A stretch of 64,000 nt of DNA from Hydrolagus colliei. Its lineage: Eukaryota. The notes under the pieces were generated by a model. It was given only the letters and a program-made list of their open reading frames with translations. It had not been told where the DNA came from and made no database searches. Where the stretch lies: contig CM068762.1 in the NCBI GenBank assembly GCA_035084275.1, positions 11,780,001 to 11,844,000 on the forward strand, given 5' to 3'. A program made the translations under genes and the position numbers. Below, piece after piece: positions 12,429 through 64,000 of the stretch (its first letter is position 1; each line of letters begins with the position of its first letter).

Positions 12429-15400
12429 ATGGACTTCACCTTGATTCTTCTCTTCTCTTCCCTCTCAGGTCAGTCACACCTGGAGCTGAGCAGCCAGATG
12501 TTCCCGTGGTTGGACTGGTTGGCATTTTGAAAGCAGTTGTTAAAAATGCTCTTGTTTTTTCTCTCATTGTCCTCTCTCTCTCTCTGTCTCTGAAAATTTC
12601 TCAACAATTGCAGAACTGTATTGAGATCTCAGTATAAAAAAACACTGTTAAGTTTCATGACTTCCCCTTACTTATTGCAAGAGTCGGATTACCGGCCTGG
12701 AGTCTGCATCTTGTGAATGTTTCAGGCATTCTCAATAAAATGGAGTCCTGTAGCTCAGTGGTTAGTGCTCTAGCCATGCCAGCGAAAGAGCTGGGTTCGA
12801 TTCCAGGCAGGGTGAAACATTGGGCAAGTTTTCGTACTCCAAACGCCTATTAATAATCCGTAAAAAAATACAAATTTGGCCACTCAAATCGCGACTGTTT
12901 GTGGGGACATTGCTGTAATTGGCTGCTGCGTTTCTCCCACAAATATACAGTCAATTCACTTTGCAGTCTATTCTGTGAGGCGCTTTAAGACGTCTAGAAG
13001 ATGTGAAAAGCCCTATATCAAATGCAAGGATTATATTCTTATTCTTATAAAATAGTATTTAGAAGTTGCTTTGCCATGCTTGGTATGAACGCTGTCACTT
13101 TCACTAAATATTCTCAGGATTGGACCAGTTTGAGATCAACGAAAATAAATGTACAAGGCTGAATAAAGAAGAACAAATAAAATTATAGAACCAACTATTT
13201 TTTTTGGAGTTGAGATAACGATCAGACATCATAAAATAGAAAAGCAGAACAGGCTCTGGGTGGGGGTGGGGGTGGGGGGCTGAATTATCTCCTCTTGTTC
13301 CTAATATAAAACAGGAAGAAATATGAAAATTCTTTCTTTTTTTTTAAAAGACCTTCTGGAAAGTCCCAGATTTTGTCATTGACTATTAGAATACCTGCGC
13401 CTTGTGACGTCCTCCTGACGTGATTGGTGTTGTATAAGTGTAATTTTGTTGTTGTTGCATTTGATGTAGTGCCTATCATGTTGTCAGGACGTCTGTCCCA
13501 AAGCTCTCCACAGGATATACGCTAAAGTGGATTGATTGTGTGTTTTGTGGGTGAAACGCGGCAGCCAAATTGGAGAAAAAGAAATAAACTAAAATGATGA
13601 AACAGGAAGAGAGTTTGACGGGGCTCCAGAAATCAGCCTCGGGTGTGGTCATCAGCTCCTCTGTCCCAGACCTGATACAGAACAAACAGCAATAACAGCA
13701 GCGTCCAGCCTCAGTGATCAATGCTTAAACCCCAATCACAATACACCAGCCGTTCAAATGTATGGATAAGAGCAGTGGTGCTCACAGTCTGTACACAGTT
13801 GGGAATCGTTTACTAAAGGAAGTGTTTGTATTGAGCAGTTATGGTTTGTTTCATTGGTGATGTTTTGTCTCTAGTTTCAGATGCAATATGGGGGGAAGCT
13901 GCTGTAACAGGAGTTGTGGGCCGAGCGGTCACAATAAACTGTCACTATGATAAACAGCGGTACCGGTCACACAGGAAATATTGGTGTTGGGGATACTATC
14001 GTGCTAGTTGTGAGGATGTAGTTGATACAAATAAGAAGAATGGACAACAAGGAAGATTCTCAATCACAGATCACACCAGTGACAGGGTATTTACTGTGAC
14101 TATGGAGGATCTCACCACTGGAGATGACGGATGGTATAACTGTGGTATTGATACACCTGGCTATGATCCACTGTTTGTTGTACGACTACACATATCCTAC
14201 GGTAAGCTACCTAAGCTATTGATTCTTATTTTAATGTGTAAAACTGTTACTTGTGAGTCTAACAAGGAAAATACAACGTTTGCAAAAAAGCTGCACATAT
14301 CTGTCCGTACCTTAAACCATTCACTTTAATTTGACTGATTTCATCTGCATCTTTCATTTGACTGTCATGATTTCCTAACTTAAGAAACTCTGTCGCATAT
14401 AACACAAGTCAGACTCCATGAGAAGTCAGTTTGTTATTCTATGACAGTTTTTAATCAGCTCCAATGTAGGAATTAGAATATGTCCGCTGTTGCTGAGCAA
14501 ATCTGAATTGTGTTCTTTGCCTATAAGCAGCTGAGATCACAGCAAAGCCAAAGTCAACCGCACACACTTCAACTACAAGTGACACACAAGACCTCAACAC
14601 GGCAGCTGCAGATGAAAAGCTCAGGTAGGAACAGAACTATTATCCCACGTGTCAGGCCCTGACATGTCATTGTGTCTTGGAGCGACAGACTGAACAGTGA
14701 GGGCAGGGATTCTTCTCATTCATCTCCTTCTAACCCTGTAAACTAACGGACAGGGTGGTCCTAGCTGGCGAAACAGTGAGAAACTTGCCTTTCAATAATT
14801 TCAGTGGTAAGTTAGGTACTTTAAGCTGATTAAACCCCAACAATTAACCCAATGGAGTCCACAAACCTCGGTCCTCACCAAACTGCAGCTCCCACAATTG
14901 TGAAACGAACCCTCCTCTACGTGTTGTAGTTTCGCCAACTTAGCAAAGAGTTGTACTTGACTCGAAAAGCCTTGTCACGTCCTGTTCTCTGCTCTCTAGG
15001 TTGGTGTACATTGTGCTGGGATTGCTGGGGCTGCTGCTGATCGCAGCCATTCTGTCTGTACTTATGCTCAGGAAGCAAAGGAAGAAGCGCGGTGAGTGTC
15101 TGACTCATATTAGGCTTTAATGGTTTATATTGACATTGATACAAATGATTTAATTGGTGTCAATTGGCTGCCCAGTCAATTCACTTCACAGTATATGAAG
15201 GGGTGGAGTCCTGTAGCTCAGTGGTAGGAACACTCGCCTTACAAGTGTGAGACCCATGTTCGAATCCAGACAGGTCAGGGTGAAACCTTTGGCAGGTTTC
15301 CTTACTCCACACACGCTTAGTAATAATCCCTCCAAAAAACATTTGTAATAAATTGATCATTTCAATCTACGACTGTTTGTGGGGATACTGCTGAGCGCAA

Positions 15401-19960: not shown

Positions 19961-21462
19961 CAGGAGCGAAGGGAACAAGGTCTGTTGTGTGGCAGCTCTC
20001 AGCGCTTCTTACTGAAAAGGAAGTGTGATCTAGTGTGATTCCCCTCCCCAGCCAATGCACAGATTAAAACACACACATACACACTCATTGTCAAACACAC
20101 ACACACACACACACACACAAATATATATACGCACACATTAATACAGTATGTACACACATATATTATTATACATACAACTTAATATATACACACACAGAGA
20201 TTAATATACACATATGCACTTAGATAGACATATATATTAAGGCAAAATTTTGCATTGTATACAGTCCCATCCATTTATGTCAAATTCGATGATATTGAGA
20301 TTGTATATTGACAAAACAGTGAAGCCCTGATTCCTCCCCTGCAGATCATTACCATAAATATACAGTGTCTGTCGGCATCGATATAAACTCCGTCACACTG
20401 ACAGCCACCAACTCTTTCAGTTAATGGCAGTATCCACGGCCTTGTTTTATCACCCGTTACATCAACAGGCATTTTATCCTCATGAGTGAGAGTGACATGT
20501 GAGTGAGGGTGACACATGTGAGGCCTATGAATCAGCCGTGTTCCATGTGCCGATCATACTCTAAAGTCTATTGTCATAATCCATACAATACCGAGTTGGG
20601 ATAGGCGCATGTATATGATATAGCACCTCTCACGTCGTTGAGATGTTTCAAAAGATGTACTGTAACGTGTATTTGTCCCACGAGCAGTCGTGGATCAAAT
20701 GACCGTATTATTATCATTTTGAAAGGATTATTACTTCCGAAATGGCAACCCGCCAATGAATTATAAAGCTGACATTTAACGTTTGATGAAGAGACTGACC
20801 TAAAGATGGTGAGTTATGGGAATAGTGTAAGATTTATTACTTTGGGAGCAGCCGGACAGACAAGTGCAAATAAATAGATTTCAACCATTCTGGTGTCATT
20901 GTATCTTTTTATTGTATGGAATTCATAGAAAAGACATTCAAGGTTTCGGGAATGATTGAGTGGAAGAACCATTGGTTTTTGGTTAATAATAATCCTTGCA
21001 TTTGATATAAGGCTTTTCACGTCTTCTAGACGTCTCAAAGCGCTTCACAGAATATACTGTACTACACTATATATTTGTAGACGAAGCAAGCAGCAACAAC
21101 AACAACAACATTTGTATAAGCACTTCAGGTCGGAAGCACATCCAATTGCGCACAGCAATGTCCCTCACACAGTCTTGGATTGAAATGACCAATTAATTAT
21201 TGTTTCTTTCAAGAGATTATTGTCAGGCTTGTGGAGTAGGGAAACTTACCCTGCCTCTCTTTTCATTAAGAGAAGACAGTTTCTCTCAGTGACCTGGTCA
21301 ACGATTCTCCAGTTATTTACCAGCAGATGGCTGTGTGTGGGACATTGCTGTGTGTATAATGGCTGCTGCGTTTCACACCTAAAAGAAAAGCACTTTGAGA
21401 TGTTTCAATGCCATATTGAGCTATAAACATCACAAATCCATCTGATCTGGATTCATCGGCCT

Positions 21463-24400
21463 CTAGGTTGGACGCCCAGTGAGTCTCTTATTGCGTTCCT
21501 CGGGTTGAGCTGAAAAAGCAAATAATTAATCCATAGATAATATTGACGTGACTGTGAGTCAAAGAGCATTTTACTTATCAATTTAGAAATAGGTTTCACT
21601 TTAATGATGTTTCTGAATTGCTGAGAAAAGTACCGTATGTTTTGAATTGACCGACATTTATTATGTTAAGGATTAATAAGAAAGGATTATTGTTAAATTA
21701 TTCATAAAAAGAAGATAATCCTCACCGTGCCTTTTCTTTGAACAGTAAATGCCCAAACCCAGAGAAATAAGCAGGACAGCGAACAGGACCCAGCGTAGCC
21801 AGCGCCACAGGATGTAACTGGGCAAAACCACAGAACAAGACAGTCAAGTCTTAAAAGAGACAGTTTCCATTGTGACAAACACCACAATTTTGCGACATTC
21901 TGACTGTGACATTAATGCAAAAACTATCAGACATTGGCCTTTGGCTGCGGATTAGACTTTTGTTTCAGGTGAAGTTTTAGAGAAAAGTGTAAATGCAAAT
22001 TAGACATGAGAAACTCAGCATAACTAGGGTTTATGGACCAGCTTTCATCTGATCTGAATGTCCTACTGGGCTCAGGGATGCCTTTTGTGGGTTATTGCTA
22101 TAAGAAGTTAGTGATAGAGACAACAGAAGAAAACAGGATATACCAAAGGGCACTGGGAGTGCCACACACAAGTGTGGTTCAGAGTATTGATTGTGAGATG
22201 AGAATAAAGTCTGAAGCTTTTCGAAAGAAATGAGGGTGGAAGAGCATTGAGCCTCTCATTTGAACCTGACTTTTTTTTTAAAAAAAGAGAATAATGGAGG
22301 AACCATTGGGAAATATCCAGGATGAAATTTGTTTCTGTGTGACGAAACCTGAGCCAATCACTATTCCCAGTGAAGGTAGCAACAACAAGTTACACTGGTA
22401 AAGTTTCTTTCACATTGGGAGGAGATGCCAAGGCGGTGGATAATAAGGGATTGGTACCAACACTCAGACGCACACACATTCACACTCTCACACACACACA
22501 CACTCATACATTCAGCCACTCACTCACCAACACACTCACACAAGAAGGATGGTCAGAAATTGTGACTGTGATGTGCGAATTACCGACTGTCCGTTCCTAC
22601 CCTAGTTTGCTTGCAGTTGAAAGGGCCTGACACATGGAGAGATAGTTCCAATCCTACCTGTTGTCTTTACGTTCACCTGGCATTGTGGAGGCTTGTGTGT
22701 CAGTGGAGGAGATGGTTGTAGCTGGAACGTGTGCAGTTGACATTGGCACGGTTGTGATCTCGGGACAGGAATATTCATGTCCTTTGAAGGGAAGAACACA
22801 ATTCAGAATCTCAACAGCTGCTCAGAAGAGAACCCTGGCACCAACCTGCACCCCAGGCTTGAAATAACAGACAACACTTTCTCTGTGTTTGTCACTGGAC
22901 TGGTCAGCAGGGGACATTAGTACTGACGCACTCAACACGTAAATTGTTCATTTACTGCCCCGCCATCGCCACCCCGCCATCACCCTTTGGAACTCCATCC
23001 CACAATCCCTTCACCTCACTCCCAAACTTTAAAGGGTCACCTCAAGACATTTCTCTTCGATCAGGCCTTCGGTCACCCTCCTACCAACTTCTCTCCCTGC
23101 CCTCCACTCTCTTTATCCCATCCCCAGCTAGGGTGAATCTGTCCAGTGTCCTGAGACATCCTCCCTGTCATGGACTGCTATGTGGTCACCCATTCAGTAG
23201 AGGGGACATAACACAATGGGATTGTGCAGTGTGGATAATTTCCCCATTGATTGAATTAATCAACGGACAAATTCAAGGCACTCTGAGACGCAGACTGGCG
23301 TGGAGAGTGTTATATAAATTGAAGTTGTTGTTGTATTAACTAACCTGAGAATCGAGTCTGAATGGACATTATTTGTTTCTCATGAATCCTCTGTTCAACA
23401 CTGTACTCACCAATGCTGTTGATTCTAACCAGGTAATGGCACGTCTCATTCAGGAACTGTAAACCTGAGACTTCAACCATTTCACTTTGTCGTGTTCCTT
23501 TGTTATTTGAGGCTGTGCAGTAGCACTGGTGAGACTGGGAGATGGAGCCACATTGTATGTCTAGTTTGTTGCTGTGAGAGATCACTGAAGCTCCAGACTG
23601 TGTCTCTCTGTACCATTGATACTGAATGGGAAGGGATCCACTGATGGACTTACAGGAGATGGAGACATTACCTCCTGAACACGAGGCATTGGGAGCTGAT
23701 AAGAATCTAAGCTGAGGAACCGACACAGGCTCTGTGGGGAAAGAGACAATCAGTCACTGGCTGACAGATTCTAATTCCTGCATTGGGACTGTTTACAGGC
23801 TGTCATAGAATAAACAACTGACTTCTCATGGAGTCTGACTTGTGTTATATGCGACAGAGCTTCTTAAGTTAGGAAATCATAACTTTCTGTGGTGTAAACT
23901 GAGCCAAGCTGAAGTACTGATGAGCTGGGTATGTGCTGAGTTACACATTGTGTTTGTAACGTGTCAGTCAATCAGTCAAATTAAAGTGAATGGTTTAAGG
24001 TACGGACAGATATGTGTAGCTTTTTTGCAAAAGTTGTATTGTCCTTGTTTGACTCATAAGTAACAGTTTTACACATTAAAATAAGAATCAATAGCTTAGA
24101 TAGCTTACCGTAGGATATGTGTAGTCTTACAGTAAACATTGGATCATAGCCAGGTGTATCAATACCACAGTTATACTGATCTGCATCTCGAGTGGTGAGA
24201 TCCTCCATAGTCACAGTAAATACCCCGTCTCTGGTGTTATCTGTGATGGAGAATCTTCCTCGTCGTCCATTCTTGTCGTTTGTATTAACTACAACCTGAC
24301 AACTAGTACGATAGTATCCCCAACACCAATATTTCCTGTGTGACCGGTACCGCTGTTTATCATAATGACAGTTTATTGTGATCGCTCGGCCCACAACTCC

Positions 24401-27354
24401 TGTTACAGTATTTTTCGCACATAATGCGTCTGAAACTAGAGACAAAACATCACCAATGGAACAAATCATAACTGCTCAATACAAACACTTCCTTTAGTAA
24501 ACGATTCCCAACTGTGTACAGACTGTGAGCACCACTGCTCTTATCCATACAGTTGAACGGCTGGTGTATTGTGATTGGGGTTTAAGCATTGATCACTGAG
24601 GCTGGACGCTGCTGTTATTGCTGTTTGTTCTGTATCAGGTCTGGGACAGAGGAGCTGATGACTACATGCCTCGCAACCCACCTGTACCTCATTCATGTCA
24701 CATCACAAGAACGTCCTCTTCGATCGCGCCTTTGGTCACCCTCCTACCCCTACCCTCCACTCCTCCTGATCCCAGGCACCCGCTCGGGTCCCAATTCCTG
24801 ACTGTCCAGTGCCTTGAGACAACCTCACAATGTGAAATGTGCTGTGTAAATAGCATTTGTTGTTGATCTTGTGAATTGAAAGATAAATAATTTTCTCCCT
24901 TAAGAATCAATTAATTTCCCCCACCCCCAAATCTGAGAGAAGAAAAATTCTGCCTGGAAATTGACTTCAGCTCATTGGCCTTATCTCCATGAGCCTCTCA
25001 GCGATTGAGGTCCACAACGTTGCGCTCACAAACAGAGCAGCGCTGAGCCACAATATGTGTGAAACTGGATGTCAGTCTCCGACGAAGGGTTGTAGACCCG
25101 AAACTTTGTCTCTTTTTCCTTTCTCCATGGATGCTGCCTGACCTGCTGAGTTTCCCCGGCAACTTCTGTTTAAGTGCAATTGATATTTCCGGATTGTTGG
25201 CCAGGACACCAGGAGAGGCTCCCTGCTTGATATCCAGTCCGTTCTCATTTAATAGGTAAATAAATGTACAGTAGATATAGCAAGCAATTCCACTGTCTTT
25301 ACACAGGGGCACTTACCGTGACTGTTGATTTGTACCAAGCAACTGCAGGTTACCTGCGCAGTTTGTAGGATTGACACTTTAACCTTTTCACTGGATTGTG
25401 TTCCTTTGTTATTCGAGGCCGTGCAGTAATACGGGTGGCACTGGTGGGAGATGGAGCCACATTGTATGTCTAGTTTGTTGCTGTGAGAGATCACTGAAGA
25501 AGCTCCAGACTGTGTCTTTCTGTACCATTGATACTGAATGGGAAGGGATCCACTGATGGACTTACAGGAGATGGAGACATTACCTCCTGAACACGAGGCA
25601 TTGGGAGCTGATAAGAATCTAAGCTGAGGAACCGACACAGGCTCTGTGGGGAAAGAGACAATCAGTCACTGGCTGACAGATTCTAATTCCTGCATTGGGA
25701 CTGTTTACAGGCTGTCATAGAATAAACAACTGACTTCTCATGGAGTCTGACTTGTGTTATATGCGACAGAGCTTCTTAAGTTAGAAGTGAAATTAAAGTG
25801 AATGGTTTAAGGTATGGACAGATATGTGTAGCTTTTTTGCAAACGTTGTATTTTCCTTGTTAGACTCACAGTCACAAGTAACAGTTTTACACATTAAAAT
25901 AGAATCAATAGCTCAGGTAGCTTACCGTAGGATATGTGTAGTCTTACAGCAAACATTGGATCATTGCCAGGTGTATCAATACCACAGTTATACCAATCTG
26001 CATCTCTAGTGGTGAGATCCTCCATAGTGACAGTAAATACCCCGTCTCTGGTGTGATCTGTGATTGAGAATCTTCCTTGTTGTCCATTCTTGTCGTTTGT
26101 ATTAACTACAACCTGACAACTAGTACGATAGTATCCCCAACACCAATATTTCCTGTGTGACCGGTACAGCTGTTTATCATAGTGACAGTCTATTGTGACC
26201 GCTCGGCCCACAACTCCTGTTACAGCAGCTTTCCCCCATATTGCATCTGAAACTAGAGACAAAACATCACCAATGAAACAAACCATAACTGCTCAATACA
26301 AACACTTCCTTTAGTAAACGATTCCCAACTGTGTACAGACTGTGAGCACCACTGCTCTTAGCCATACAGTTGAATGGCTGGTGTATTGTGATTGGGGTTT
26401 AAGCATTGATCACTGAGGCTGGACGCTGCTGTTATTGCTGTTTGTTCTGTATCAGGTCTGGGACAGAGGAGCTGATGACCTCTTCCTTTTTCATCATTTT
26501 AGATTATTTTGTTTTCTCCAATTTGGCTGCCACGTTTCACCCACAAAACACACAATCAAAGCCTGTTCTGCCATTCTATTAGACCCTGGTTGATCGGTGC
26601 CTCAACTACCAAAAAAGGGTTGGTTTTACAATTATTTTTTCTTTGTATTCAGTCTTTACATTGATTTTGACTGATCTCAAACTGGTCAAATCCTGGGAAT
26701 GTTTAGTGAAAGCGACAGCGTTCATACCAAGCACGGCAAAGCAACTTCTAAGTTCTGTTTTGCAACAATAATAGTAACCCTGGCATTTGACATAGACACA
26801 TTCATGTCTTCTAGACGTCTCATAGCGCTTCACAGAATAGACTGCAAAGTGAATTGACTGTATTTGTGGGTGAAATGCGGCAGCATATTAAACACAGCAG
26901 CGTCCCCACAAACAGACGTGGCTTGAGTGGCCAAATTATTATTGTTTTCTTTAGGGATTATTGATAGGTATGTGGAGTAAGGTTTCACCCTGCCTGGAAT
27001 CGAACCCGGCTTTTTTTCCCTGCATGGCTAGAGCTCTAACCACTGAGCTAAAGGACTCCATTTTGTCGAGAAGACTTAAAACGTTCACAAGATGCAGACT
27101 CCAAGCCGGTAATCAGAGTGCGGCGATAAGTAAGGGGAAGTCATGAAACTTAACAGTTTTTTTTATATACTGAGATCTCAATACGGGAAATTTTGAGAAA
27201 CCGAGAGAGAGCGAGAGACAAAGAGAGAGGAGAACGCTTTTAACAACTACTTTCAAAATGGCAACCAGTTCAACCACAGGAACGTCTGGCTGCTCAGCTC
27301 TGGATGTGACTGACCTGAGAGCGAAGAGAAGAGAAGAATCAAAGTGATGTCCAT
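21463..27354 (-). CDS. R3: activating-type receptor, predicted V-C2-V-C2 four-Ig ectodomain, about 534 aa
   Basis: Exons: leader 27315-27354, V1 25926-26252, C2' 25317-25643, V2 24109-24435, C2 23411-23731, stalk 22658-22781, TM 21726-21817 (YILWRWLRWVLFAVLLISLGLGIYCSKKRH), tail 21463-21509 (AQPEERNKRLTGRPT*). There is no leader between C2' and V2, and the 1605 nt join in frame. Confidence 0.72.
23411..23731 (-). CDS. R3 second C2-type Ig exon
   Basis: ORF 23340-23726; ccccacag|AGCC acceptor, ATT G|gtgagt donor. Confidence 0.9.
24109..24435 (-). CDS. R3 second Ig V exon
   Basis: Inside ORF 23981-24469; canonical splice sites. Confidence 0.9.
25317..25643 (-). CDS. R3 first C2/I-type Ig exon (divergent 3' third)
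   Basis: ORF 25249-25638; SISC..YQWY..PYYCTASN; acceptor ccccacag, donor CAC G|gtaagt. Confidence 0.88.
25926..26252 (-). CDS. R3 first Ig V exon
   Basis: Inside ORF 25894-26286; canonical splice sites; paralogous to the other V exons. Confidence 0.92.
26765..27060 (-). mobile_element. tRNA-derived SINE in R3 intron 1
   Basis: Full-length copy, reverse orientation. Confidence 0.8.
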
Positions 27355-30382: not shown

Positions 30383-33300
30383 CTGGAGTTAAATTGCACG
30401 GGTCAATACAATCCTAAGACATGATTTGCTTTGTGCTTAGTAATAAGTTTGTGTTTGATATCGCGCCTATAATGTCACCATCTCAAAGTGTTCACTTCAC
30501 AGTCTGCTCACACAATCTCTCACAAACAGCCTGGAGGTGACTGACCAGTTAATCTGGTGGATTGTTGGCCAAAACACGGGGAGAAACTCCCATCTCTTTG
30601 TGATCAGTGGCTCTTTCACATCCACCTGAGGCAGGTCCCAGGTCATCAGTTTAAACTTTTCTTAACGTACATTAAACTTCTTACCTCATCACCATTCCCT
30701 GCTCCACGTGAGCCAACTGTTCTTCTATGTGAAGCTGCAATACGGAGATCTTAGACAGAGGGAAAATGTTCACAAGAATCAACAACTGTCTCTTGACAAT
30801 CTGCTACTAATCATTGACATGTTGGAAGTAAAGTTAAAGCCACAGAAAATCACTGAATAACTTTCCTTTATTCTCCCTCCTTTGCTAAATATCTGAAATC
30901 AGTGCCCTCTAGTCTCTAACTCACTGATCAACCCAAATAATTAAATTCTGTCGACTCATCAAATCTCATTGCAGATTTGATGTGATCACCAAACTAAAAT
31001 GTCACTTAATCAAGCATAATAATAATAATCCTTGTATTTAAGACAGCGCTTTTCACGTTTTTTAAACTTCTCAAAGCGCTTCACAGAATATACTGTATTG
31101 ACTATGATTGTAGTGAATTGACTGTATATTTGGGGGTGAAATGTGGCAGCCAATTGCGCACAGCATTGTCCCATAAACAGTCGTGAATTTCTTTTAAAAA
31201 TTGCAAGGGATTATTACCAGATATGTGAAGTAAGGAAACTTGCCCAAGGTTTCACGCTGCCCGGAATCGAACCCAGGTCTCTCACCTTCAAGGTGAGTGC
31301 TCTCGCTACTGAGCTACAGGATTCCAAATATAGCGCATTATTGAGTGTTCAAGACATCTCAAAGCGCTTCGCTGAACATACAGTGAAATTAATTGACCGG
31401 GCAGCCAATTGTCAACAATTAAATCGTTTGTATCCATGTCAATATAAACCATTAAAGCCTTATATGAGTCAGACACTTACCGCGCTTCTTCCTTTGCTTC
31501 CTCAGCACAAGTACAGACAGAATGGCTGCGATCAGCAGCAGCCCCAGCAATCCCAGCACAATGTACACCAACCTAGAGAGCAGAGAACAGGACGTGACAA
31601 GGCTTTTCGAGACACGTAAAATTATTTTCTAAGTTGGTGAAACTACAACACGTTTCACAATTGTGGGAGTTGCAGTTTGGTGAGGACCGAGGTTTGTGGA
31701 CTCCATTGGGTTAATTGTTGGGGTTTAATCTGCTTAAAATACCTAACTTACCACTGAAATTATTGAAAGGCAAGTTTCTCACTGTGTCTCCAGCTCCTAC
31801 CTGAGCTTTTCACCTGCAACTGCACTGTTGAGGTCTTGTGTGTCAGTGGGGTCTTGTGTGACAGTGGAGGAGATGGTTGTTGCTGGAACGTGTGCAGTTG
31901 ACATTGGCGCGGTTGTGATCTCGGGACAGGAATATTCATTTCCTTTGAAGGGAAAGAACACAATTCAGATTTGCTCAACAGCTGCTCAGAGGAGAACCCT
32001 GGCACCAACCTGCACCTCAGGCTTGAAATAACAGACAACACTTTCTCTGTGATTGTCACTGGGCTGGTCAGCGGGGGACATTAGTACTGACGCACTCACC
32101 ATTTATACTGTTAATTTAGAGCCCCACCATCGCTTCCCTGCCTGCACTCCATCCCACAGTCCCTTCGCCTCACTCCAACCCTGGCCTCTTTCAAGACACA
32201 TCTCAAAACACTCCTCTTCAATCGGGCCTAGTGTCATCCTCCTACCATCTACACACCCTGCCCTCCACCCTCCCTTTTCCCAGCCTCCAGCTCAGGTGCA
32301 ATTCTCTCACTGTCCAGTGCCTTAGGACATCCTCTCTCCTACCCTCTCCTACCCATTTAGTACAGGGGACATAACACAATGGGTTTGTGCAGTGTGGACA
32401 ATTTCTCCATTTATTGAATTAACTAACCCGAGAATCCAGTCTGAATGGACATTATTTGTTTCTCATGAATCCTCTGATCAACACTGTACTCACCAATGCT
32501 GTTGATTCTAACCAGGTAACGGCACGTCTCATTCAGGAACTGTAAACCTGAGACTTCAACCATTTCACTTTGTTGTGTTCCTTTGTTATTTGAGGCTGTG
32601 CAGTAGCACTGGTGAGACTGGGAGATGGAGCCACATTGTATGTCTAGTTTGTTGCTGTGAGAGATCACTGAAGAAGCTCCAGACTGTGTCTCTCTGTACC
32701 ATTGATACTGAATGGGAAGGGATCCACTGATGGACTTACAGGAGATGGAGACATCACCTCCTGAACACGAGGCATTGGGAGCTGATAAGAATCTAAGCTG
32801 AGGAACTGACACAGGCTCTGTGGGGAAAGAGACAATCAGTCACTGGCTGACAGATTCTAATTCCTGCATTGGGACTGTTTACAGGCTGTCATAGAATAAA
32901 CAACTGACTTCTCATGGAGTCTGACTTGTGTTATATGTGACAGAGCTTCTTAAATTAGAAGTGAAATTAAAGTGAATGGTTTAAGGTACGGACAGATATG
33001 TGTAGCTTTTTTGCAAACGTATTTTCCTTGTTAGACTCACAGTCACAAGTAACAGTTTTACACATTAAATAAGAATCAATAGCTCAGGTAGCTTACCGTA
33101 AGATATGTGTAGTCTTACAGCAAACATTGGATCATAGCCAGGTGTATCAATACCACAGTTATACTGATCTGCATCTCCAGTGGTGAGATCCTCCATAGTC
33201 ACAGTAAATACCCCGTCTCTGGTGTGATCTGTGATTGAGAATCTTCCTCGTCGTCCATTCTTGTTGTTTGTATTAACTACAACCTGACAACTAGCACGAT

Positions 33301-50690: not shown

Positions 50691-51477
50691 ATTCACTTTA
50701 ATTTGACTGATTGACTGACACTTTACAAACACAATGTGTAAACTCAGCACATACCCAGCATATATTAAACTTCTTCAGCTTGGCTCAAGTACTTCAGCTT
50801 GGCTCAGTTTACACCACAGAAAGTTATGATTTCCTCATTTAAGAAGCTCTGTCGCATATAACACAAGTCAGACTCCATGAGAAGTCAGTTCTTTATTCTA
50901 TGACAGCCTGGAAACAAGTCCCAATGCAGGAATTAGAATCTGTCAGCAGTTCTTGAGCAAATCTGAATTGTGTTCTTTGCCTATAAGCAACTGAGATCAC
51001 ATCAAAGCCAAAGTCACCGGCGCATGTTCCAGCTACAAGCAACTCCTCCACTGTCACACAAGTCTCCAACACGGCAACTGTGGGTGAAAAGCTGAGGTAG
51101 GAATGGACTTGTAGTGGTTAGGACATCACAATCATAATTTCTGAGCATCGGTCTAGTGTGAGTGTTGGTGAGTGAGTGTGTGATTGTATGAGTGTTGATG
51201 AGTGTGTGGGTCACCATGTGTGTGTGTATCTGTTGTTACCAATCCATTACTGTGCAGCGCCTTGACACATCCTCCCAAAGTGAAAGATACTTTGCAAGTT
51301 TAACTTGTTGTTGTTCTTGCCTTGCCAGAGAATAGTGTTGCTGCAAATCTCAACACACAAATTTCACCCTGTATATTTCCCAATGGTTCCTCCAATATTC
51401 TCTTTTTAAAAAAGTCAAGATAATGTGAGCATCTCAACGCTCTTCTGCCCACATTGCCCACATTGCTTTGCAATTCT

Positions 51478-54703: not shown

Positions 54704-57700
54704 ATGGACTTCACCTTGATTCTTCTCTTCTCTTCCCTCTCAGGTCAGTCACACCCGGAGCTGAGCAGCCAGATGTTCCCATGGTTGGACTGGTTGGCAT
54801 TTTGAAAGCGGTTGTTAAAAATTGAATTATTTCTCTCTCTCTGCGTCTCAAAATTTCTCAATAATTTCAGAATAGTAACTGGAATCTCAGTAAAGGAAAA
54901 TAATGTTAACTTTCCCCTTACTTATTGCCTTACTCTGATTATTAGCCTGAAGTCTGCATCTTGTGAATGTTTCAAGCCTTGTCTGTTTCCCTCTCGACAA
55001 AATACAACTTAGAAGTTGCTTTGCCGGGTTTGGTCAGAACGCTGTTGGTGTCACTGAACATTCTCAGGACGAACAGCCTGAACAGTTTGAGATCAGTCCC
55101 AAATCGAATAAAAAATTAACGTACAAAACTGAATAAAACCAACAAAAAAAAATCAATATAAAACCAACCTGTTTTTTGGGGAGTTGAGGGACAGATCAGT
55201 CATGATCTAATAGAATGGCAGAACAGGCTTCGGAGGCTGAATTACCTCCTCCTGTCCCACAGGAAGAAATGAACAAATTTGTTGTTGGTTTAAACTCCTT
55301 CTAGAAATTCCCAGATTTTCTCCATGACTATTGTAATAATATTGTATTATTCTATTGATGCAGTTATGGTTTGTGTGATTGGTGATGTTCTGTCTGTAGT
55401 TTCAGGAGCATTAATAGCAAAAGCTGCTGTAACAGGAGTTGTGGGTCGAGCGGTCAAGATAGACTGTCACTATGATAAATATTATCAGTTATATTTCAAA
55501 TATTGGTGTCGGGGACGGTATCGCTCCAGTTGTGAGTTACTTATTCAGACAAATGACAACAATGGACGACGAGGAAGATTCTCAATCACAGATAACACCA
55601 GAGATGGGGTATTTACTGTGACTATGAAGGGTCTCACCACTGGAGATGACAGATGGTATTATTGTGGTATTGAAAAGAATGGCTATGATTCAATGTTTGC
55701 TGTAAGACTACACATATCCTACGGTAAGCTATCTGAGCTATTGGTTCTTATTTTAATGTGTAAAACTGTTACTTGTAAGTCTAACATGGAAAATACAACG
55801 TTTGCAAAAAAGCTGCACATATCTGTCCGTACCTTAAACCATTCACTTTAATTTGACTGATTGACTGACACGTTACAAACACAATGTGTAACTCAGCACA
55901 TACCCAGCTCATCAGTACTTCAGCTTGGCTCAGTTTACACCACAGAAAGTTATGATTTCCTACCTTAAGAAGCTCTGTCACATATAACACAAGTCAGACT
56001 CCATGAGAAGTCAGTTGTTTATTCTATGACAGCCTGTAAACAGTCCCAATGCAGGAATTAGAATCTGTCAGCCAGTGACTGATTGTCTCTTTCCCCACAG
56101 AGCCTGTGTCGGTTCCTCAGCTTAGATTCTTATCAGCTCCCAATGCCTCGTGTTCAGGAGGTGATGTCTCCATCTCCTGTAAGTCCATCAGTGGATCCCT
56201 TCCCATTCAGTATCAATGGTACAGAGAGACACAGTCTGGAGCTTCAGTGATCTCTCACAGCAACAAACTAGACATACAATGTGGCTCCATCTCCCAGTCT
56301 CACCAGTGCTACTGCACAGCCTCAAATAACAAAGGAGCACGACGAAGTGAAATGGTTGAAGTCTCAGGTTTACAGTTCCTGAAGGAGACGTGCCGTTACC
56401 TGGTTAGAATCAACAACGTTGGTGAGTACAGTGTTGAACAGAGGATTCAGGAGAAACAAATAATCCATTCAGATGGATTCCCGGTACTAAATGGATGACC
56501 ACTAACCAGTCCATGACAGGGAGGATGTCACAAGGCACTGGATAGATTCAACCAAGCTGAGTGTTGGGATATAGAGGTTGGAGGGGAGGGAGTGAAAATG
56601 GTAGGAGAGGGACCAAAGGCTTGATCGAAGAGAAGGGCCTTGAGGCATCTCTTGATAATTTGGGAGTGAGGCGAAGGGACTGTGGGATAGAGTTCCAAAG
56701 GGTGAGGGTGGGGAGGCGATCATAAGGCAGCAAATGAACAATTTACATGTTGAGTGCGTCAGTACTAATGTCCCTTGCTGACCAGCCCAGTGACAATCAC
56801 AGAGAAAGTGTTGTCTGTTATTTCAAGCCTGAGGTGCAGGTTGGTGCCAGGGTTCTCCTCTGAGCAGCTGTTGAGCAAATCTGAATTGTGTTCTTTCACT
56901 TCAAAGGAAATGAATATTCCTGTCCCAAGATCACAACCGCGCGAATGTCAACTGCACACGCTCCAGCGACAAGCATCTCCTCCACTGTCACACAAGCCTC
57001 CACTGACACACAAGCCTCCACTGACACACAAGCCTCCACTGACACACAAGCCTCCACTGACACACAAGCCTCTAACATGGCAGCTGCAGGTGAAAAGCTC
57101 AGGTAGGAATGGACAGGTAATCGGTAGCAAATCACAGTTACAATTTGTGACCATCCGTCTGGTGTGTGTGTGTGCATGAGTCTGTGTATGTGTGATTGTA
57201 TGAGTGTGTGTGCATGAATGTGTGTGTGTGTGCATGAGTGTTTGTGTATGTATGACTGTATAAGTCTCTTTCCTAATTATTCCTCATTATCGTTAACTTA
57301 TTATAGCAATATCCCACAGAAGATATCCCTGAGCCCAACAGTAGGTCATTCAGATCAGATGAAAGCTGGTCCATAGACCCTGGTTTCTCTTCTCTAAGTT
57401 GCATTTAGACTTTTCTCTGAAGCTTTTCTCTAAAAATGGAGAGTGGGATTGAATTGCTTTTTTCAAATAGCCTGCACAGACTGGATGGGCCAAATGGCCT
57501 CCTTTTGTGCCATAAGAGTCTACTATTCTATGATTCTATTAGACAAACGTCTAATCCACAGGCAAAGGCCAATGTCTGATAGTTTTTGCATTAATGCCAC
57601 AGTCAGAAAGTGGGAAAATTGTGGTGTTTGTCACAATGGAAACTGTCTCTTTTAAGACTTGACTGTTTTGTTCTATGGTTTTGCCCAGTTACATCCTGTG

Positions 57701-59626: not shown

Positions 59627-62600
59627 ATGGACTTCACCTTGATTCTTCTCATTTCTTCCCTCTCAGGTCAGTCACACCCGGAGCTGAGCAGCCAGATGTT
59701 CCCATGGTTGGACTGGTTGCCATTTTGAAAGCTGTTGGTTTGTTTTCTCTCACATTGTCTGTCTCTCTCTCTCTCTCTCTCTCTACCTCTCAAAATTTCT
59801 CAACAATTTCAGAACAGTATTGGAATCTCTGAAAAGATTTTTTAAAAACAATTTCATGACTTCCCCTAACTCATTGCCACACTCTGATTACCAGTCTGGA
59901 GTCTACATCTTGTGAATGTTTCAAGCCTCCTGTCTCTCTCTCTCTCTCAACAAAATACAACTTAGAAGTTGCTTTGTTAGGTTTGGTCTGAACGCTGTTG
60001 CTGTCACTAAACATTCTCCGGATTGGACCCCCAATCACAATACACCAGCCGTTCAACTGTGTGGATGAGAGCAGTGGTGCTCACAGTCTGTACACAGTTG
60101 GGAATCGTTTACTAAACGAAGGGTTTGTATTGAGCAGTTATGGTTTGTTTGATTGGTGATGTTTTGTCTCTAGTTTCGGACGCATTATGGGCGAAAGCTG
60201 CTGTGACAGGAGTTGTGGGCCGAGCGGTCACAATAGACTGTCACTATGAGAAACAGTGGTACCGGTCACACGGGAAATATTGGTGTTGGGGATGGTATCG
60301 CTCCAGTTGTAAGGTTGTAGTTAATACAAACGACAACAATGGACAACGAGGAAGATTCTCAATCGCAGATAACACCAGTGCCGGGGTATTTACTGTGACT
60401 ATGGAGGATCTCACCACTGGAGATGCAGGATGGTATAACTGTGGTGTTTATTCACTTGTTAAAGGCCCAATGTTTGCTGTAAAACTACAGATATCCTACG
60501 GTAAGCAATCTGAGCTGTTCACTCTAATTTAAAAGTGTAAAACTGTTCCATGTTAGTCAAACAAATAAAATACAAAACCAGAATTCCTGGGAAAATCAGT
60601 AGGTCAGGCAGCAGCCATGGAGGAAAGAAAGTGAGTCAACGTTTCGGGTCCATGACCCTTTGACAGAACTTTGACAGAAGGAAAATTCAATGTTTGCAAA
60701 TACTGTACATTACACATATCTGACCGTACTTTAAACCGTTGACTTTAATTTGACTTATTGACTGACACGTTACAAACACAATGTGTAACTCAGCACATAC
60801 CCAGCTCATCAGTACTTCAGCTTGGCTCAGTTTACACCTCAGAAAGTTATGATTTCCTACCTTAAGAAGCTCTGTCAATACACAAGTCAGACTCCATGAG
60901 AAGTCAGTTGTTTATTCTATGACAGCCTGTAAACAGTCCCAATGCAGGAATTAGAATCTGTCAGCCAGTGACTGATTGTCTCTTTCCCCACAGAACCTGT
61001 GTCGGTTCCTCAGCTTAGATTCTTATCAGCTCCCAATGCCTCGTGTTCAGGGGTTGATGTCTCCATCTCCTGTAAGTCCATCAGTGGATCCCTTCCCATT
61101 CAGTATCAATGGTACAGAGAGACACATTCTGGAGCTTCAGTGATCTCTCACAGCAACAAACTAGACATACAATGTGGCTCCATCTCCCCGTCTCACCAGT
61201 GCTACTGCACAGCCTCAAATAACAAAGGAACACAACAAAGTGAAATGGTTGAAGTCTCAGGTTTACAGTTCCTGAATGAGACATGCCGTTACCTGGTTAG
61301 AATCAACAGCATTGGTGAGTACAGTGTTGAACAGAGGATTCAGGAGAAACAAATAATGTCCATTCAGACTGGATTCTCGGGTGAGTTAATTCAATCAATA
61401 GAGAAATTATCCACACTGCACAAACCCATTGTGTTGTGTCCCTTGTACTAAATGGGTGACCACTAACCAGTCCATGACTGTGAGGGAGGGAGGTAGCGCG
61501 GGCGGGTGGGCAGGGAGAAAAAGGAATAGAAGAGAGGATTTCCTAAGGCACTGCACAGAAACCTGCACAGGCACTGCACAGAAATCTGTTAGTGAATTTC
61601 ACCTGAGCTGGGGGCTGGGCCAAGGCAGGGTGGAGGGCAAGGAGATAAGAGGTTAGGAGGATGACACTAGACCCGATTGAAGAGGAACGTCTTGAGACAT
61701 GCCTTGAAAGAGGCCAACAACAACAAAACAACAACAATTTAAACTTATAAAGCGCCTTTCACGTCGGGAGGACGTCCCAAGGCGCTGCACAGGAGGCGTG
61801 TGACCCGAGCTGGGAGGGGAGAGTTCGGGAAGTGGTGAAACACGAAGGGGAGGTCAAAAAGTTCGGTGGGGAACAAAAGGCACGATCGAAGAGGAAAGTC
61901 TTCAAACCGGCCTTGAAAGAGGAAAGGGAAGAAACGAGATGGAGGGATTGGGGGATGGAATTCCACTGGGTGGGAGCGGAGAAACTGAAGGCCCGGCCTC
62001 CGATGGTGGGGCGGTTCGGGCGGGGGGCTTGGAGCAGGCCAAGTCCAGATGAACAGAGGATCCGGGTGGGCTTATAGGGGGAGAGTAAATCGGTTAAATA
62101 GGGCGGAGCAAGGCCATGTAAGGCCTTGAAGGTGAGGACGAGGTTCTTGAACTCGATCCTCTGGAGGATGGGGAGCCAATGGAGACGGGCGAGGGTGGGG
62201 GTTATGTGGTCGCGGAGGCGGGTGCGGGATAGTACACGGGCTGCAGAGTTTTGGCCAGGGTTGGAGCGAGGCAAACAGACTGTAGGATGGAGTTCCAATG
62301 GGTGAAGATAGGGTAGAGATGGTGGCATGGTAAATTAACAGTATAAATGGTGAGTGCGTCAACACTAATGTCCCCCCGCTGACCAGCCCAGTGACAATCA
62401 CAGAGAAAGTGTTGTCTGTTATTTCAAGCCTGAGGTGCAGGTTGGTGCCAGGGTTCTCCTCTGAGCAGCTGTTGAGCAAATCTGAATTGTGTTCTTTCCC
62501 TTCAAAGGAAATGAATATTTCTGTCCCAAGATCACAACCGCGCCAATGTCAACTGCACACGTTCCAGCGACAACCATCTCCTCCACTGTCACACAAACCT

Positions 62601-64000
62601 CCACAACGCCAGGTGAACCTGAAGACAACAGGTAGGATTGGAACTATCTCTCCGTATGTCAGGCCCTGACATGTCATTATGTCTTGGAGGGGTAGACTGG
62701 ACAGAGAGGGCAAGGATTATTCTCATTAATCTCCTTTTAACCTTGTAAACTAACGGGTAGGGTGGTCCTAGCTCGAGAAATAATCATTTCAGTCATAAAT
62801 TAGCCACTGAAAGCTGATTAAACCGCACAATTTACTGAATGTAGCCCATAAACCTTGGCCCTCACCAAACTGCAGCTCACGCAATTGCAAAGCGAGCCCT
62901 CGTCTACGTGTTATAGTTTTGCAAACTTTGCAAAGAGGTGTAAGTGTGTCGAGAAGCCTTGTCACTTCTTGTTGTCTGCTCTGTAGGTTGGTGTACATTG
63001 TGCTGGGATTGCTGGGGCTGCTGCTGATCGCAGTCATTCTGTCTGTACTTGTGTTCAGGGAGCAAAGGAAGAAGCGCGGTGAGTGTCTGACTCATTAGGA
63101 TTCAATGGTTTATATTGACATTTATATACGTTATTCCACACCGTGCCCAGTCATTTCACTCCACAGAATATTCTGTGGGACGTTTTGAGGCGTCTCGAAG
63201 ACGTGATAAGGAGCTATATTTGGAATCCTGTAGCTCAGTGGTTAGAGCACTCGCCTTGAAAGTGAGAGAAATGGATTCGATATTAGGCAGGGTGCAACCT
63301 TGCGCGAGATTGCTTATCTCACACGTCTGATAATTTGTTTTTTTAATCCACGACTGTTTATGTGATGCTGCAGTGAACAAATGGGCGCCACATTTCGCCC
63401 ACAAACATACGGTTAATTCAGGTGACAGCATATTCTAAGAAGCGCTTTGAGATATCTAGAAGACATGAAAAATGCTACATCAAATGCAAGGATTATTATT
63501 ACTACAATGTTTGATGAGATGACTTTCCACTTTAGTGGTCACATGAAATCTACAGTGACATGGTGCAAATTTAGAAATTTGATAAGAGTCGATAGGTTGA
63601 AATTATTTGGATTGAACAGTGAGTTAGTGACTAGAGGGCAGTAATTCCAGATAGTTAACAAAAGAAGGAGAATAAAGGAAAGTTATTACACAGAGTTATT
63701 AGACAGGATGTGGAATGCCTCTCTGGGCAGTGGTCGAGACAGGATCTATATTAGATTACAGGAGGGTGTTAGACAACTGTCTGAAGAGCAATAAGTGGCA
63801 GGAGTTTGGGAAAAAGGAAACTGAACAGATTGCTCTGTCAATGAGCCAGCACAGACACAATGGGCCAAATTGCCTTTTTCTGTACTGTATATTTCAGTGA
63901 TTTTCTGTGGCTTTAACTTTACTTCCAACATGTCAATGATTAGTAGCAGATTGTCAGGAGACAGTTGTTGATTCTTGTGAACATTTTCCCTCTGTCTAAG
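59627..64000 (+). CDS. R8: V-C2 inhibitory-type receptor, 3' part outside the window
   Basis: Exons: leader 59627-59666, V 60174-60500, C2 60994-61314, stalk 62508-62631, TM 62987-63078. The window ends exactly at the cyt1 acceptor (tttccctctgtctaag), matching R4 and R5. Confidence 0.83.
60174..60500 (+). CDS. R8 Ig V exon
   Basis: Inside ORF 60140-60532; canonical splice sites. Confidence 0.92.
60578..60680 (-). mobile_element. Short retroposon tail fragment resembling the shark HE1 SINE/HER1 LINE 3' end (second copy at about 25060-25175, +)
   Basis: gaaggg..gacccgaaac..gctgcctgacctgctga motif; inserted relative to paralogous introns. The family assignment is from memory. Confidence 0.45.
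60994..61314 (+). CDS. R8 C2-type Ig exon
   Basis: ORF 60999-61451; canonical splice sites. Confidence 0.9.
61730..62330 (-). mobile_element. L2-clade LINE 3' fragment in the R8 C2-stalk intron
   Basis: ORF 61759-62328: QNSAARVL..HITPTLARLHWLP..APTQWNSIP. Confidence 0.85.
63220..63503 (+). mobile_element. tRNA-derived SINE
   Basis: Full-length copy. Confidence 0.8.

What the first reader, a model, noticed from the sequence alone, without database searches (positions are those of the whole stretch)
22560..22781. Visible recombination junction converting an inhibitory-type gene into an activating one
Seen (minus strand): the R3 stalk exon and the first ~35 nt of its intron (gtaggattggaactatctctccatgtgtcaggccct) nearly match inhibitory R8 (stalk 62508-62631 and gtaggattggaactatctctccgtatgtcaggccct). 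At about 22622 the sequence switches abruptly to the activating-type intron of R6/R7 (gtaggaacggacag..cacatcacagtcacaatttctgaccatcc; compare 57103-57160), which leads to the Arg-TM exon. Conversely, R2 and R4 (inhibitory) share the GEKL/DEKL-type stalk end with R6 and R7 (activating). Inference: the sequence just 3' of the stalk donor is a hotspot for signalling-module swaps, the mechanism proposed for generating activating counterbalance receptors.
Basis: partly seen in the sequence, partly recalled or inferred. Interest (0 to 1): 0.78.

Follow-up and report, generated by a model that had tools for sequence, protein, structure and literature searches.

The report
Recombination scar in shark-type immune receptor
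One gene in a cluster of paired activating and inhibitory immune receptors of a cartilaginous fish carries a real base-level scar where inhibitory-type sequence was joined to an activating-type signalling end, a known way for such receptors to evolve but rarely seen this clearly.

Summary
On the minus strand, the R3 stalk exon (22781-22658) and the first 36 intron bases (22657-22622) match inhibitory R8 (34/36). After 21 unassignable bases (22621-22601), a second complete donor (GT at 22600) opens the activating-type intron of R6/R7. That intron leads to an Arg-containing transmembrane exon (21817-21726) and a short tail. All exons are open, in phase and have canonical splice sites.

The tract that is unambiguously inhibitory-type is only 63-288 nt. 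The intron just upstream (23200-22900) groups R3 with activating R7 (support 100/99; AU test rejects R3+R8). R3 is therefore a mosaic. Either an inhibitory/activating fusion was later eroded by gene conversion, or an activating gene received a short patch.

The hotspot idea is not supported. The general activating/inhibitory homology edge (intron +7 to +11) is one ancient boundary shared with Callorhinchus milii.

C. milii has an independent, recent junction of the same design. A ~6.8 kb tandem duplication fused a copy of an inhibitory gene's 5' part to a copy of an activating gene's 3' part.

The family is chondrichthyan CD300/pIgR-like (MDIR-like). This is a new example of a known kind of event and is moderately interesting.

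The parts
22658..22781 (-). R3 stalk exon (124 nt, phase 1 in, phase 2 out). Its last ~27 nt are the R8/R5-type '..PGERKDN' end.
   Evidence: It is 92.6% identical to the R8 stalk exon. Splice sites are caaag|ga and acag|gtagga.
22622..22657 (-). The donor presumed to be in use (d1), plus the first 36 nt of the inhibitory-type intron.
   Evidence: 34/36 identical to R8 62632-62667, with 0 matches expected by chance. Homologous to the intron starts of R2, R5 and C. milii CmInh.
22601..22621 (-). 21-nt filler of unresolved origin. It may be a decayed remnant of the activating partner's stalk end.
   Evidence: Unique in the window. Not significantly like the stalk ends of R6, R7, R2 or R4, nor like inhibitory intron +37 onwards. 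The best resemblance is to a C. milii stalk end, p~0.01 before correction for about 12 comparisons.
21818..22600 (-). Activating-type intron. It starts with a retained second donor (d2, gtaggaacggacag). An imperfect (TG)n tract lies at 22460-22542.
   Evidence: The 5' part is 78.8% identical to R6 and 79.5% to C. milii. From about 22300 downwards it is 94-98% identical to R6 and R7.
21726..21817 (-). Transmembrane exon with Arg in the membrane span (activating type).
   Evidence: The same module occurs in C. milii P0021 and in sharks and a ray (P0001, P0014, P0003).
21463..21509 (-). Last coding exon, a short cytoplasmic tail AQPEERNKRLTGRPT followed by a stop.
   Evidence: Matches the tail AEPEQHHKILTGHPT of C. 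milii P0021.
22900..23200 (-). Intron segment upstream of the stalk exon in which R3 is sister to activating R7.
   Evidence: R3+R7 support 100/99. AU test rejects R3+R8, p=3e-4.
23411..23731 (-). R3 C2-type Ig exon, homogenised with R4, R5, R7 and R8 (97-100%).
24109..24435 (-). R3 V-type Ig exon (CD300/pIgR-like).
   Evidence: Pfam V-set, 52 bits.
25317..27354 (-). Leader exon (27354-27315), a further V exon (26252-25926) and a further C2 exon (25643-25317). These probably belong to R3, making it a four-Ig gene.
   Evidence: Phases are compatible and the ORF is open from end to end. No leader exon lies between this unit and the R3 V exon. Heptranchias P0001 has the same V-C2-V-C2-stalk-Arg-TM layout.
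62508..62667 (+). Comparator: R8 stalk exon plus the first 36 nt of its inhibitory-type intron.
56907..57160 (+). Comparator: R7 stalk exon (GEKL end) plus the start of the activating-type intron.

Best explanation
R3 is a chimeric but intact activating receptor gene. The junction at 22622/22600 is the scar of a non-homologous (illegitimate) recombination between two paralogues of opposite signalling type.

**Most likely sequence of events**
1. A duplication or unequal exchange had one breakpoint 36 nt into the stalk-to-TM intron of an inhibitory gene of the R8/R5 ('NN' stalk-end) type.
2. The other breakpoint lay at, or up to 21 nt before, the stalk donor of an activating gene.
3. The product kept the inhibitory partner's stalk end and donor. 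These now lie upstream of the activating partner's own donor, intron, Arg-TM exon and short tail.
4. Splicing from the first donor (d1) to the Arg-TM exon is in frame.
5. The second donor (d2) is now buried in the intron. Reading past d1 gives an immediate stop (aac agg tag).
6. Frequent gene conversion among paralogues later overwrote the 5' side. Only 63-288 nt of the inhibitory parent can still be recognised.

**Shown:** the junction, the two donors, the intact reading frame, the mosaic similarity profile, and the parallel event in C. milii.

**Inferred:** the order of events, the type of rearrangement, use of d1, and signalling through an Asp-bearing adaptor that pairs with the membrane Arg.
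For: - **Junction.** Similarity switches at the junction and cannot be chance.
- **Not a join of other window copies.** R3 differs from every other copy in the window on both flanks, by 7-8% on the 5' side and about 21% on the 3' side.
- **Two donors.** They lie 57 nt apart.
- **Intact gene.** Exons are open and in phase with canonical splice sites. TM and tail match the C. milii activating protein P0021.
- **Parallel in C. milii (locus L001).**
  - The arrangement has the same design: stalk exon with its donor, then inhibitory-type intron, then a remnant of the activating stalk end with its old donor, then activating intron and Arg-TM exon.
  - The flanks are 98-100% identical to the neighbouring inhibitory and activating genes.
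  - The gene order is Act1-Hybrid-Inh2, with uniform 98.8-98.9% identity over a ~6.8 kb repeat unit.
  - This is the expected product of one tandem duplication with breakpoints in two adjacent genes.
- **Conversion is pervasive.**
  - C2 exons are 97-100% identical across genes of both types.
  - The TM tract is 94-98% identical among R3, R6 and R7 but 83-85% to C. milii.
  - The intron 5' part is only about 79% identical to both.
- **Literature.** Replacement of an inhibitory receptor's signalling domain by that of an existing activating receptor is the main documented route to new activating KIR and Ly49 (PMC2213150).
Against: - The intron immediately upstream of the stalk exon groups R3 with activating R7, not with R8 or R4. 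The fusion model therefore needs a second event, a later conversion from an R7-like gene. The patch model needs only one event.
- The origin of the 21-nt filler is not established.
- Neighbouring genes no longer show an Act-Hybrid-Inh order around R3.
- There is no expression or read-level evidence.
- The sequence at the junction is predicted identically by the fusion and patch models.
Confidence: 0.45

Rival explanations
1. Short patch into a gene that was already activating. A break near the end of the stalk exon of an old activating gene was repaired by copying from an R8-like inhibitory paralogue. Copying ran 25 nt past the edge of homology (intron +11 to +36). The end was then joined without homology to the other broken end about 21 nt before the old donor. 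No change of signalling type occurred. Only the membrane-proximal stalk end and the donor were replaced.
For: - Both flanks of the tract are of activating lineage. Upstream, R3+R7 has support 100/99. Downstream is the activating intron.
- Flank divergence is old, about 16-21% from R7 and R6. The tract is only about 8% from R8.
- The tract length of 63-288 nt is typical of conversion tracts.
- One event explains everything, including the duplicated donor.
Against: - Grouping in the upstream intron need not mark a signalling lineage. In C. milii the activating and inhibitory neighbours are 95-100% identical there.
- Divergence-based ordering is unreliable where conversion is frequent.
- The only directly documented event of this design, in C. 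milii, is a duplication fusion and not a patch.
Confidence: 0.35
2. Assembly artefact: a chimeric join between two near-identical paralogues.
For: The cluster is highly repetitive, with exon blocks 93-100% identical. No read data are available.
Against: - R3 differs by 7-8% and about 21% from the nearest other copies on the two flanks, so it is not a join of copies present in the window.
- The junction lies in unique sequence. It has a 21-nt filler found nowhere else and a duplicated donor, which mis-joins do not create.
- All reading frames and splice sites are intact.
Confidence: 0.04
3. True recombination hotspot. The first bases of the stalk-to-TM intron, or the nearby (TG)n tract of the activating intron, promote repeated breakage and module swapping.
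For: - Several boundaries lie close to the stalk donor: the general homology edge at +7 to +11, the R3 junction at +36, and an R4 deletion starting at +7.
- In both known junctions the activating-side breakpoint lies in the last 0-47 nt of the stalk exon.
- R3, R6 and R7 all carry TG-rich microsatellites 60-200 nt into the activating intron.
Against: - The +7 to +11 edge is shared with C. milii, so it is one ancient event.
- The inhibitory-side breakpoints differ widely, +36 versus about +640.
- The R4 change is a plain deletion.
- With only two junctions, clustering is explained by the need to keep a whole stalk exon with donor and a whole TM exon with acceptor.
Confidence: 0.08

Closest known systems
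Recombinant activating KIR and Ly49 (for example KIR3DS1 and rhesus KIR3DH), formed when the signalling domain of an inhibitory receptor is replaced by that of an existing activating receptor (Abi-Rached & Parham 2005, PMC2213150)
   Same: Multigene cluster of paired receptors. The activating module (charged TM plus short tail) forms one clade, while ectodomain trees mix activating and inhibitory genes. New combinations arise by recombination between the ectodomain and TM exons.
   Different: Different receptor family (CD300/pIgR-like V plus C2 domains) and a cartilaginous fish. The KIR and Ly49 cases were inferred from domain-by-domain trees. Here the junction is non-homologous and visible at base level, with a retained second donor. 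Whether R3 changed its signalling type at this event is not resolved.
Ectodomain homogenisation of paired receptors by gene conversion (KLRC/NKG2, PMC3210942; Siglec-11/16, PMC5701461; CD300A/CD300C, PMC12447643; CEACAM, PMC2832619). Abstracts only, seen.
   Same: Activating and inhibitory partners keep near-identical ligand-binding exons. Identity ends before the TM exon. In the window, C2 exons are 97-100% identical across types and homology stops at intron +7 to +11.
   Different: In R3 the copied tract overshoots the homology edge and ends in a non-homologous join. Those systems are described with conversion tracts that end within homology.
Modular domain immune-type receptors (MDIR) of the clearnose skate and CD300/CMRF35-like molecules (PMC3031540 for the description; Cannon et al. 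2006 from my own memory, not read here)
   Same: Chondrichthyan multigene family with CD300/pIgR-like V domains, variable numbers of Ig domains, and both activating and inhibitory members.
   Different: Membership rests on database names and domain matches. No direct comparison with the skate MDIR sequences was made. The window comes from a chimaera-like species, not a skate.
Fusion genes made by unequal exchange or tandem duplication between neighbouring paralogues (haemoglobin Lepore/anti-Lepore type; my own knowledge)
   Same: The 5' part of one paralogue is joined to the 3' part of its neighbour. The C. milii case has the gene order expected of the duplication product.
   Different: Lepore-type exchanges occur within homologous sequence. 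Both junctions here are non-homologous: a 21-nt filler in R3 and a 7-nt templated filler in C. milii.

Membership tests
CD300/CMRF35-like / pIgR-like (MDIR-like) immune receptors of cartilaginous fish | N-terminal V-set Ig domain of the CD300/pIgR type | tested here: met
   Pfam V-set, 52 bits, E 9e-14. Best database relatives are named polymeric immunoglobulin receptor-like or CMRF35-like in Heptranchias, Cetorhinus, Callorhinchus and others, E down to 5e-165.
CD300/CMRF35-like / pIgR-like (MDIR-like) immune receptors of cartilaginous fish | Clustered multigene family with a variable number of Ig domains | tested here: met
   At least eight gene units in 64 kb. Layouts seen are V only, V-stalk, V-C2-stalk and probably V-C2-V-C2-stalk.
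CD300/CMRF35-like / pIgR-like (MDIR-like) immune receptors of cartilaginous fish | Direct sequence relationship to the published skate MDIR proteins | not tested
   The skate MDIR sequences were not retrieved. The link rests on the description in PMC3031540 and on my memory.
Paired activating/inhibitory receptors | Inhibitory members have an uncharged TM and cytoplasmic ITIM/ITSM motifs | tested here: met
   TM is LVYIVLGLLGLLLIAAILSVL in R2, R4, R5 and R8. Cytoplasmic ORFs of R2 and R5 carry ITYAEV, TEYA(S/T)V and TTYANV. The same holds in C. milii P0006. The R8 cytoplasmic exons lie beyond the window.
Paired activating/inhibitory receptors | Activating members have a basic residue in the TM and a short tail without motifs | tested here: met
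   SYILWRWLRWVLF.. plus a 15-residue tail in R3. The same TM exon occurs in R6 and R7. It is conserved in C. milii, sharks and a ray.
Paired activating/inhibitory receptors | Association with an ITAM adaptor and opposite signalling output | not testable with these tools
   This needs co-expression, co-precipitation and signalling assays.
Recombinant activating receptor formed by signalling-domain replacement (KIR3DS1 type) | The 3' module groups with activating genes | tested here: met
   Below 22601, R3 matches only R6 and R7 and the C. milii activating genes.
Recombinant activating receptor formed by signalling-domain replacement (KIR3DS1 type) | The 5' (ectodomain and stalk) part groups with an inhibitory gene | tested here: inconclusive
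   This is true only for 63-288 nt at the stalk end and intron start (nearest R8 at 92%; AU test rejects R3+R7, p=6e-5). The next 300 nt upstream group with activating R7 (100/99). V and C2 are homogenised across types.
Recombinant activating receptor formed by signalling-domain replacement (KIR3DS1 type) | A definable breakpoint between the last ectodomain exon and the TM exon | tested here: met
   Junction at 22622/22600 in the stalk-to-TM intron.

The most novel reading that the evidence does not exclude
The interval from the end of the stalk exon into the stalk-to-TM intron is a genuine, sequence-driven breakage hotspot. One candidate driver is the TG-rich microsatellite that follows the activating-type donor in R3, R6 and R7. 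On this reading, cartilaginous fish have used it for over 100 million years to swap signalling modules between paired receptors. The R3 scar and the C. milii duplication junction would be two surviving products of a recurrent process.
Probability: 0.08. Interest if true: 0.65.

Novelty: new member of a known kind. Interest (0 to 1): 0.4.

Why it matters
Paired activating and inhibitory receptors are thought to gain new activating members by recombination that swaps signalling modules. That idea rests mostly on conflicting domain trees in mammalian KIR, Ly49, Siglec and CEACAM genes.

Here the exchange can be read base by base in a cartilaginous fish. There are two independent scars in two species. 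Both are non-homologous joins that leave a spare donor in the intron.

- The process is at least as old as jawed vertebrates' receptor clusters.
- It can operate by duplication with breakpoints in adjacent genes.
- Later gene conversion erases all but a few dozen bases of the evidence.

That last point is a caution for tree-based inference of which parent was which.

Tried and rejected
1. **Is the 21-nt filler a decayed copy of the GEKL/DEKL stalk end?** Semi-global alignments against the R6, R7, R2, R4 and R8 stalk ends were no better than shuffles. Only one C. milii stalk end reached p~0.01 before correction for about 12 comparisons. I left this as a possibility only.
2. **Does the inhibitory-type intron hold an old internal copy of the donor region that could have guided a homologous exchange?** The candidate is gggtagactggacag at about +60 in R8. 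The similarity is not significant, p~0.1 or worse. Rejected.
3. **Was the filler copied from elsewhere in the window?** There is no other copy within 3 mismatches.
4. **A max-chi-square breakpoint test on the R3/R7/R8 triplet.** The nominal result is inflated because R8 at the 5' end and R7 at the 3' end are aligned to non-homologous sequence. I used only the sites between 23030 and 22685 and replaced the test with segment trees and AU tests.
5. **Using 'R7 missing' in windows 23300-23200 as a sign that R3 is inhibitory-like there.** This reflects an R7-specific deletion of about 60 nt, so it is uninformative.
6. **Dating the event from divergences.** The values are 8% for the tract and 16-21% for the flanks. 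I judge this unreliable because conversion is frequent.
7. **Literature search for MDIR.** It returned one relevant paper. No paper on chondrichthyan CD300-like clusters was found.
8. **RDP/GARD.** These programs are not installed and were not run.
Full report
**What the window is.** The 64 kb window holds at least eight related gene units for type I Ig-superfamily receptors.

- Each unit has a short leader exon, a V-set exon and usually a C2-like exon. A Thr/Ser-rich stalk exon follows, and then one of two unrelated 3' ends.
- The inhibitory-type end has an uncharged TM exon (LVYIVLGLLGLLLIAAILSVL). Cytoplasmic exons follow with ITYAEV, TEYA(S/T)V and TTYANV motifs.
- The activating-type end has a TM exon with an Arg in the span (SYILWRWLRWVLF...). 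It is followed by a 15-residue tail.
- Pfam finds a V-set domain at 52 bits.
- The nearest database proteins are chondrichthyan 'polymeric immunoglobulin receptor-like' and 'CMRF35-like' proteins. Callorhinchus milii is closest at 64-70% identity over partial matches.
- Both TM modules recur in C. milii, sharks and rays. Both are therefore ancient.
- The family fits the description of skate MDIR/CD300-like receptors (PMC3031540). I did not compare directly with the skate sequences.
  - R2, plus strand, V exon at 13875, inhibitory
  - R3, minus strand, activating
  - R4, minus strand, V exon at 33423, inhibitory
  - R5, plus strand, V exon at 41497, inhibitory
  - R6, plus strand, V exon at 49687, activating
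  - R7, plus strand, V exon at 55400, activating
  - R8, plus strand, V exon at 60174, inhibitory

**The observation.** It is correct in every detail.

- The R3 stalk exon is 22781-22658 and is 92.6% identical to R8's.
- The next 36 bases (22657-22622) are the start of the inhibitory-type intron and match R8 at 34 of 36 positions.
- BLAST and a sliding-window comparison against all paralogues show R8, R5 and R2 similarity stopping at 22622. Only R6 and R7 similarity appears from 22601 down.
- Neither match can be chance.
- Two details refine the picture:
  - The blocks are separated by 21 bases (22621-22601) that match nothing else in the window.
  - The activating-type block begins with its own complete donor (gtaggaacggacag, GT at 22600). 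R3 therefore has two donor motifs 57 nt apart.
- R3 reads as an intact gene. All exons are open, phases fit (1, 1, 1 then 2, then 1) and splice sites are canonical.
- The TM exon and last exon line up with the annotated C. milii activating protein P0021.
- Reading past the first donor gives an immediate stop (aac agg tag).

- An alignment of the stalk region shows that only the last ~27 nt of the exon plus the 36 intron bases (22684-22622, 63 nt) are specifically of the R8/R5 type.
- The body of the exon carries no decisive sites.
- From 22909 upwards R3 shares derived states with activating R7, for example aaatgaacaatttac versus aaattaacagtataa in R8, R4 and all C. milii copies.
- A tree of 23200-22900 gives R3+R7 at 100/99 and R4+R8 at 96/92. 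The AU test rejects R3+R8 (p=3e-4).
- A tree of the stalk exon plus 36 nt puts R7 with R4 (97/96) and R3 nearest R8. The AU test rejects R3+R7 (p=6e-5).
- I named these groups after seeing the alignments, so the p-values are indicative only.
- Further upstream, C2 and V are 93-100% identical among genes of both types.
- Downstream, the first ~330 nt of the activating intron are as far from R6 (78.8%) as from C. milii (79.5%). From about 22300 on, through the TM exon, R3, R6 and R7 are 94-98% identical, against 83-85% to C. milii.
- R3 is therefore a patchwork shaped by repeated gene conversion. The recognisable inhibitory-type tract is an island of 63-288 nt.

**A parallel in another species.** I fetched the C. 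milii loci that encode P0021 and P0006.

- The second gene unit in L001 has the same design as R3 in this order:
  - a stalk exon with its own end and donor
  - the whole inhibitory-type intron
  - a destroyed acceptor (ccgcag changed to cagtac)
  - the first 14 nt of the inhibitory TM exon
  - a 7-nt filler that repeats the start of that exon
  - the last 47 nt of an activating gene's stalk exon with its donor
  - the activating intron and the Arg-TM exon
- Its 5' part is 98-100% identical to the next gene downstream, which is inhibitory. Its 3' part is 97-100% identical to the gene upstream, which is activating.
- Self-comparison shows a repeat unit of about 6.8 kb with uniform 98.8-98.9% identity across the activating 3' end, the intergenic DNA and the next gene's 5' part.
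- The gene order Act1-Hybrid-Inh2 is what one tandem duplication produces when its breakpoints fall in two adjacent genes.
It is subject to confirmation that the duplication is not an assembly error.

**What R3 most likely is.** Two histories predict exactly the same junction.

- *Fusion.* A duplication or unequal exchange joined an R8-like inhibitory gene at intron +36 to an activating gene at or just before its stalk donor. Later conversion from R7-like and other paralogues overwrote the 5' side up to the point where the stalk ends differ.
- *Patch.* An old activating gene suffered a break near its stalk end and copied from an R8-like gene. Copying ran 25 nt beyond the homology edge, and the end was joined without homology.
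- The patch model needs one event and fits the activating-lineage flanks. The fusion model needs one more conversion, which is common here, and has the C. milii precedent.
- I give fusion 0.45, patch 0.35, a true hotspot 0.08 and an assembly artefact 0.04.
- That the junction is a genuine scar of illegitimate recombination between paralogues of opposite type I hold at about 0.9.

**The hotspot claim.** I do not think it holds.

- The place where activating and inhibitory genes stop being alignable (intron +7 to +11) is the same for R2/R6, for R7 versus R2, and for the C. milii pair.
- Both intron types are conserved between the two species at about 80%. That edge is therefore one old boundary that has been inherited. 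It is also where conversion tracts must stop.
- The R4 peculiarity is a ~150-nt intron deletion.
- The two true junctions have inhibitory-side breakpoints at +36 and about +640.
- A junction must keep a whole stalk exon with its donor and a whole TM exon with its acceptor to give a working gene. Survivors will therefore cluster in this interval without any hotspot.

**Supporting evidence for module shuffling in general.**

- The stalk-end type (EKL or NN) and the signalling type occur in all four combinations.
- R2 (inhibitory) and R6 (activating) share a derived deletion that removed the C2 exon and the start of the stalk exon. Their alignment ends at intron +7.

**Comparison with what is known, and verdict.**

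- The event belongs to a well-described class. New activating KIR and Ly49 arise mainly by recombination that replaces an inhibitory receptor's signalling domain with an existing activating one (PMC2213150).
- Ectodomains of paired receptors are homogenised by gene conversion (PMC3210942, PMC5701461, PMC12447643; abstracts seen).
- Three things are new here: the taxon and family, the base-level visibility of non-homologous junctions that retain a second donor, and the demonstration that conversion can erase nearly all trace of one parent.
- I rate it a new member of a known kind, with interest 0.4.

Noticed in passing
window 27354-21463 (-): R3 is probably a four-Ig gene (leader, V, C2, V, C2, stalk, Arg-TM, tail). 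The upstream V (26252-25926) and C2 (25643-25317) exons are intact. The C2 donor is phase 1 and fits the R3 V acceptor. The joined ORF is open from end to end, and no leader exon lies between the two halves. Heptranchias P0001 has the same layout.
   Followed up: partly
L001 12831-24277 (Callorhinchus milii, MU249850.1): A recent ~6.8 kb tandem duplication (98.8-98.9% identity) has breakpoints in an activating and an adjacent inhibitory gene. The junction at L001 19629/19637 makes a hybrid gene unit with a dead inhibitory TM acceptor and a 7-nt templated filler. The public annotation merges this unit with the next gene into one 669-residue product.
   Followed up: yes
window 14470-14520 (+) and 50960-51000 (+): R2 (inhibitory) and R6 (activating) share a deletion that removed the C2 exon and the start of the stalk exon. 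The junction reads gaatctgtcagc|agttcttgagcaaatc, with possible 'cagc' microhomology. They nevertheless carry opposite signalling modules.
   Followed up: partly
window 48445-48479 (+): The R6 leader exon has a 5-nt deletion relative to all other leaders. It ends in phase 2 and does not fit the phase-1 V acceptor, so R6 may be a pseudogene or may use another donor.
   Followed up: no
window 19960-19920 (-): A dead leader copy downstream of R3. ATG is changed to ATT, it has the same 5-nt deletion as the R6 leader, and its donor ag|gt is changed to aa|gt.
   Followed up: no
window 56979-57072 (+): The R7 stalk exon contains 5.2 tandem copies of an 18-nt unit (CCTCCACTGACACACAAG, 98% matches). 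They encode (STDTQA)n, a mucin-like expansion of the stalk. R4 has two copies.
   Followed up: partly
window about 22300 (-), compared with 21260-22219: There is a sharp rise in R3 identity to R6 and R7, from about 79% in the 5' part of the activating intron to 94-98% around the TM exon. Identity to C. milii stays at 83-85%. The activating module is being homogenised among paralogues, with a tract boundary inside the intron.
   Followed up: partly
window 31794-31801 (-): The R4 stalk-to-TM intron lacks about 150 nt (from +7 to about +158 of the R2 intron). This is a simple deletion, not a module junction.
   Followed up: partly
window 3514-4041 (-): A more distant CD300-like V-domain ORF (..KYWCKGHF..DAGWYWCGIE..) lies apart from the main family, with no obvious partner exons nearby.
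   Followed up: no
window 51413-51715 (+): A ~300-nt repeat element is inserted in the R6 activating-type intron and is absent from R3 and R7. R5 and R8 share a different repeat insertion upstream of their stalk exons (about 43900-44270 and 61990-62255).
   Followed up: no
   Followed up: no
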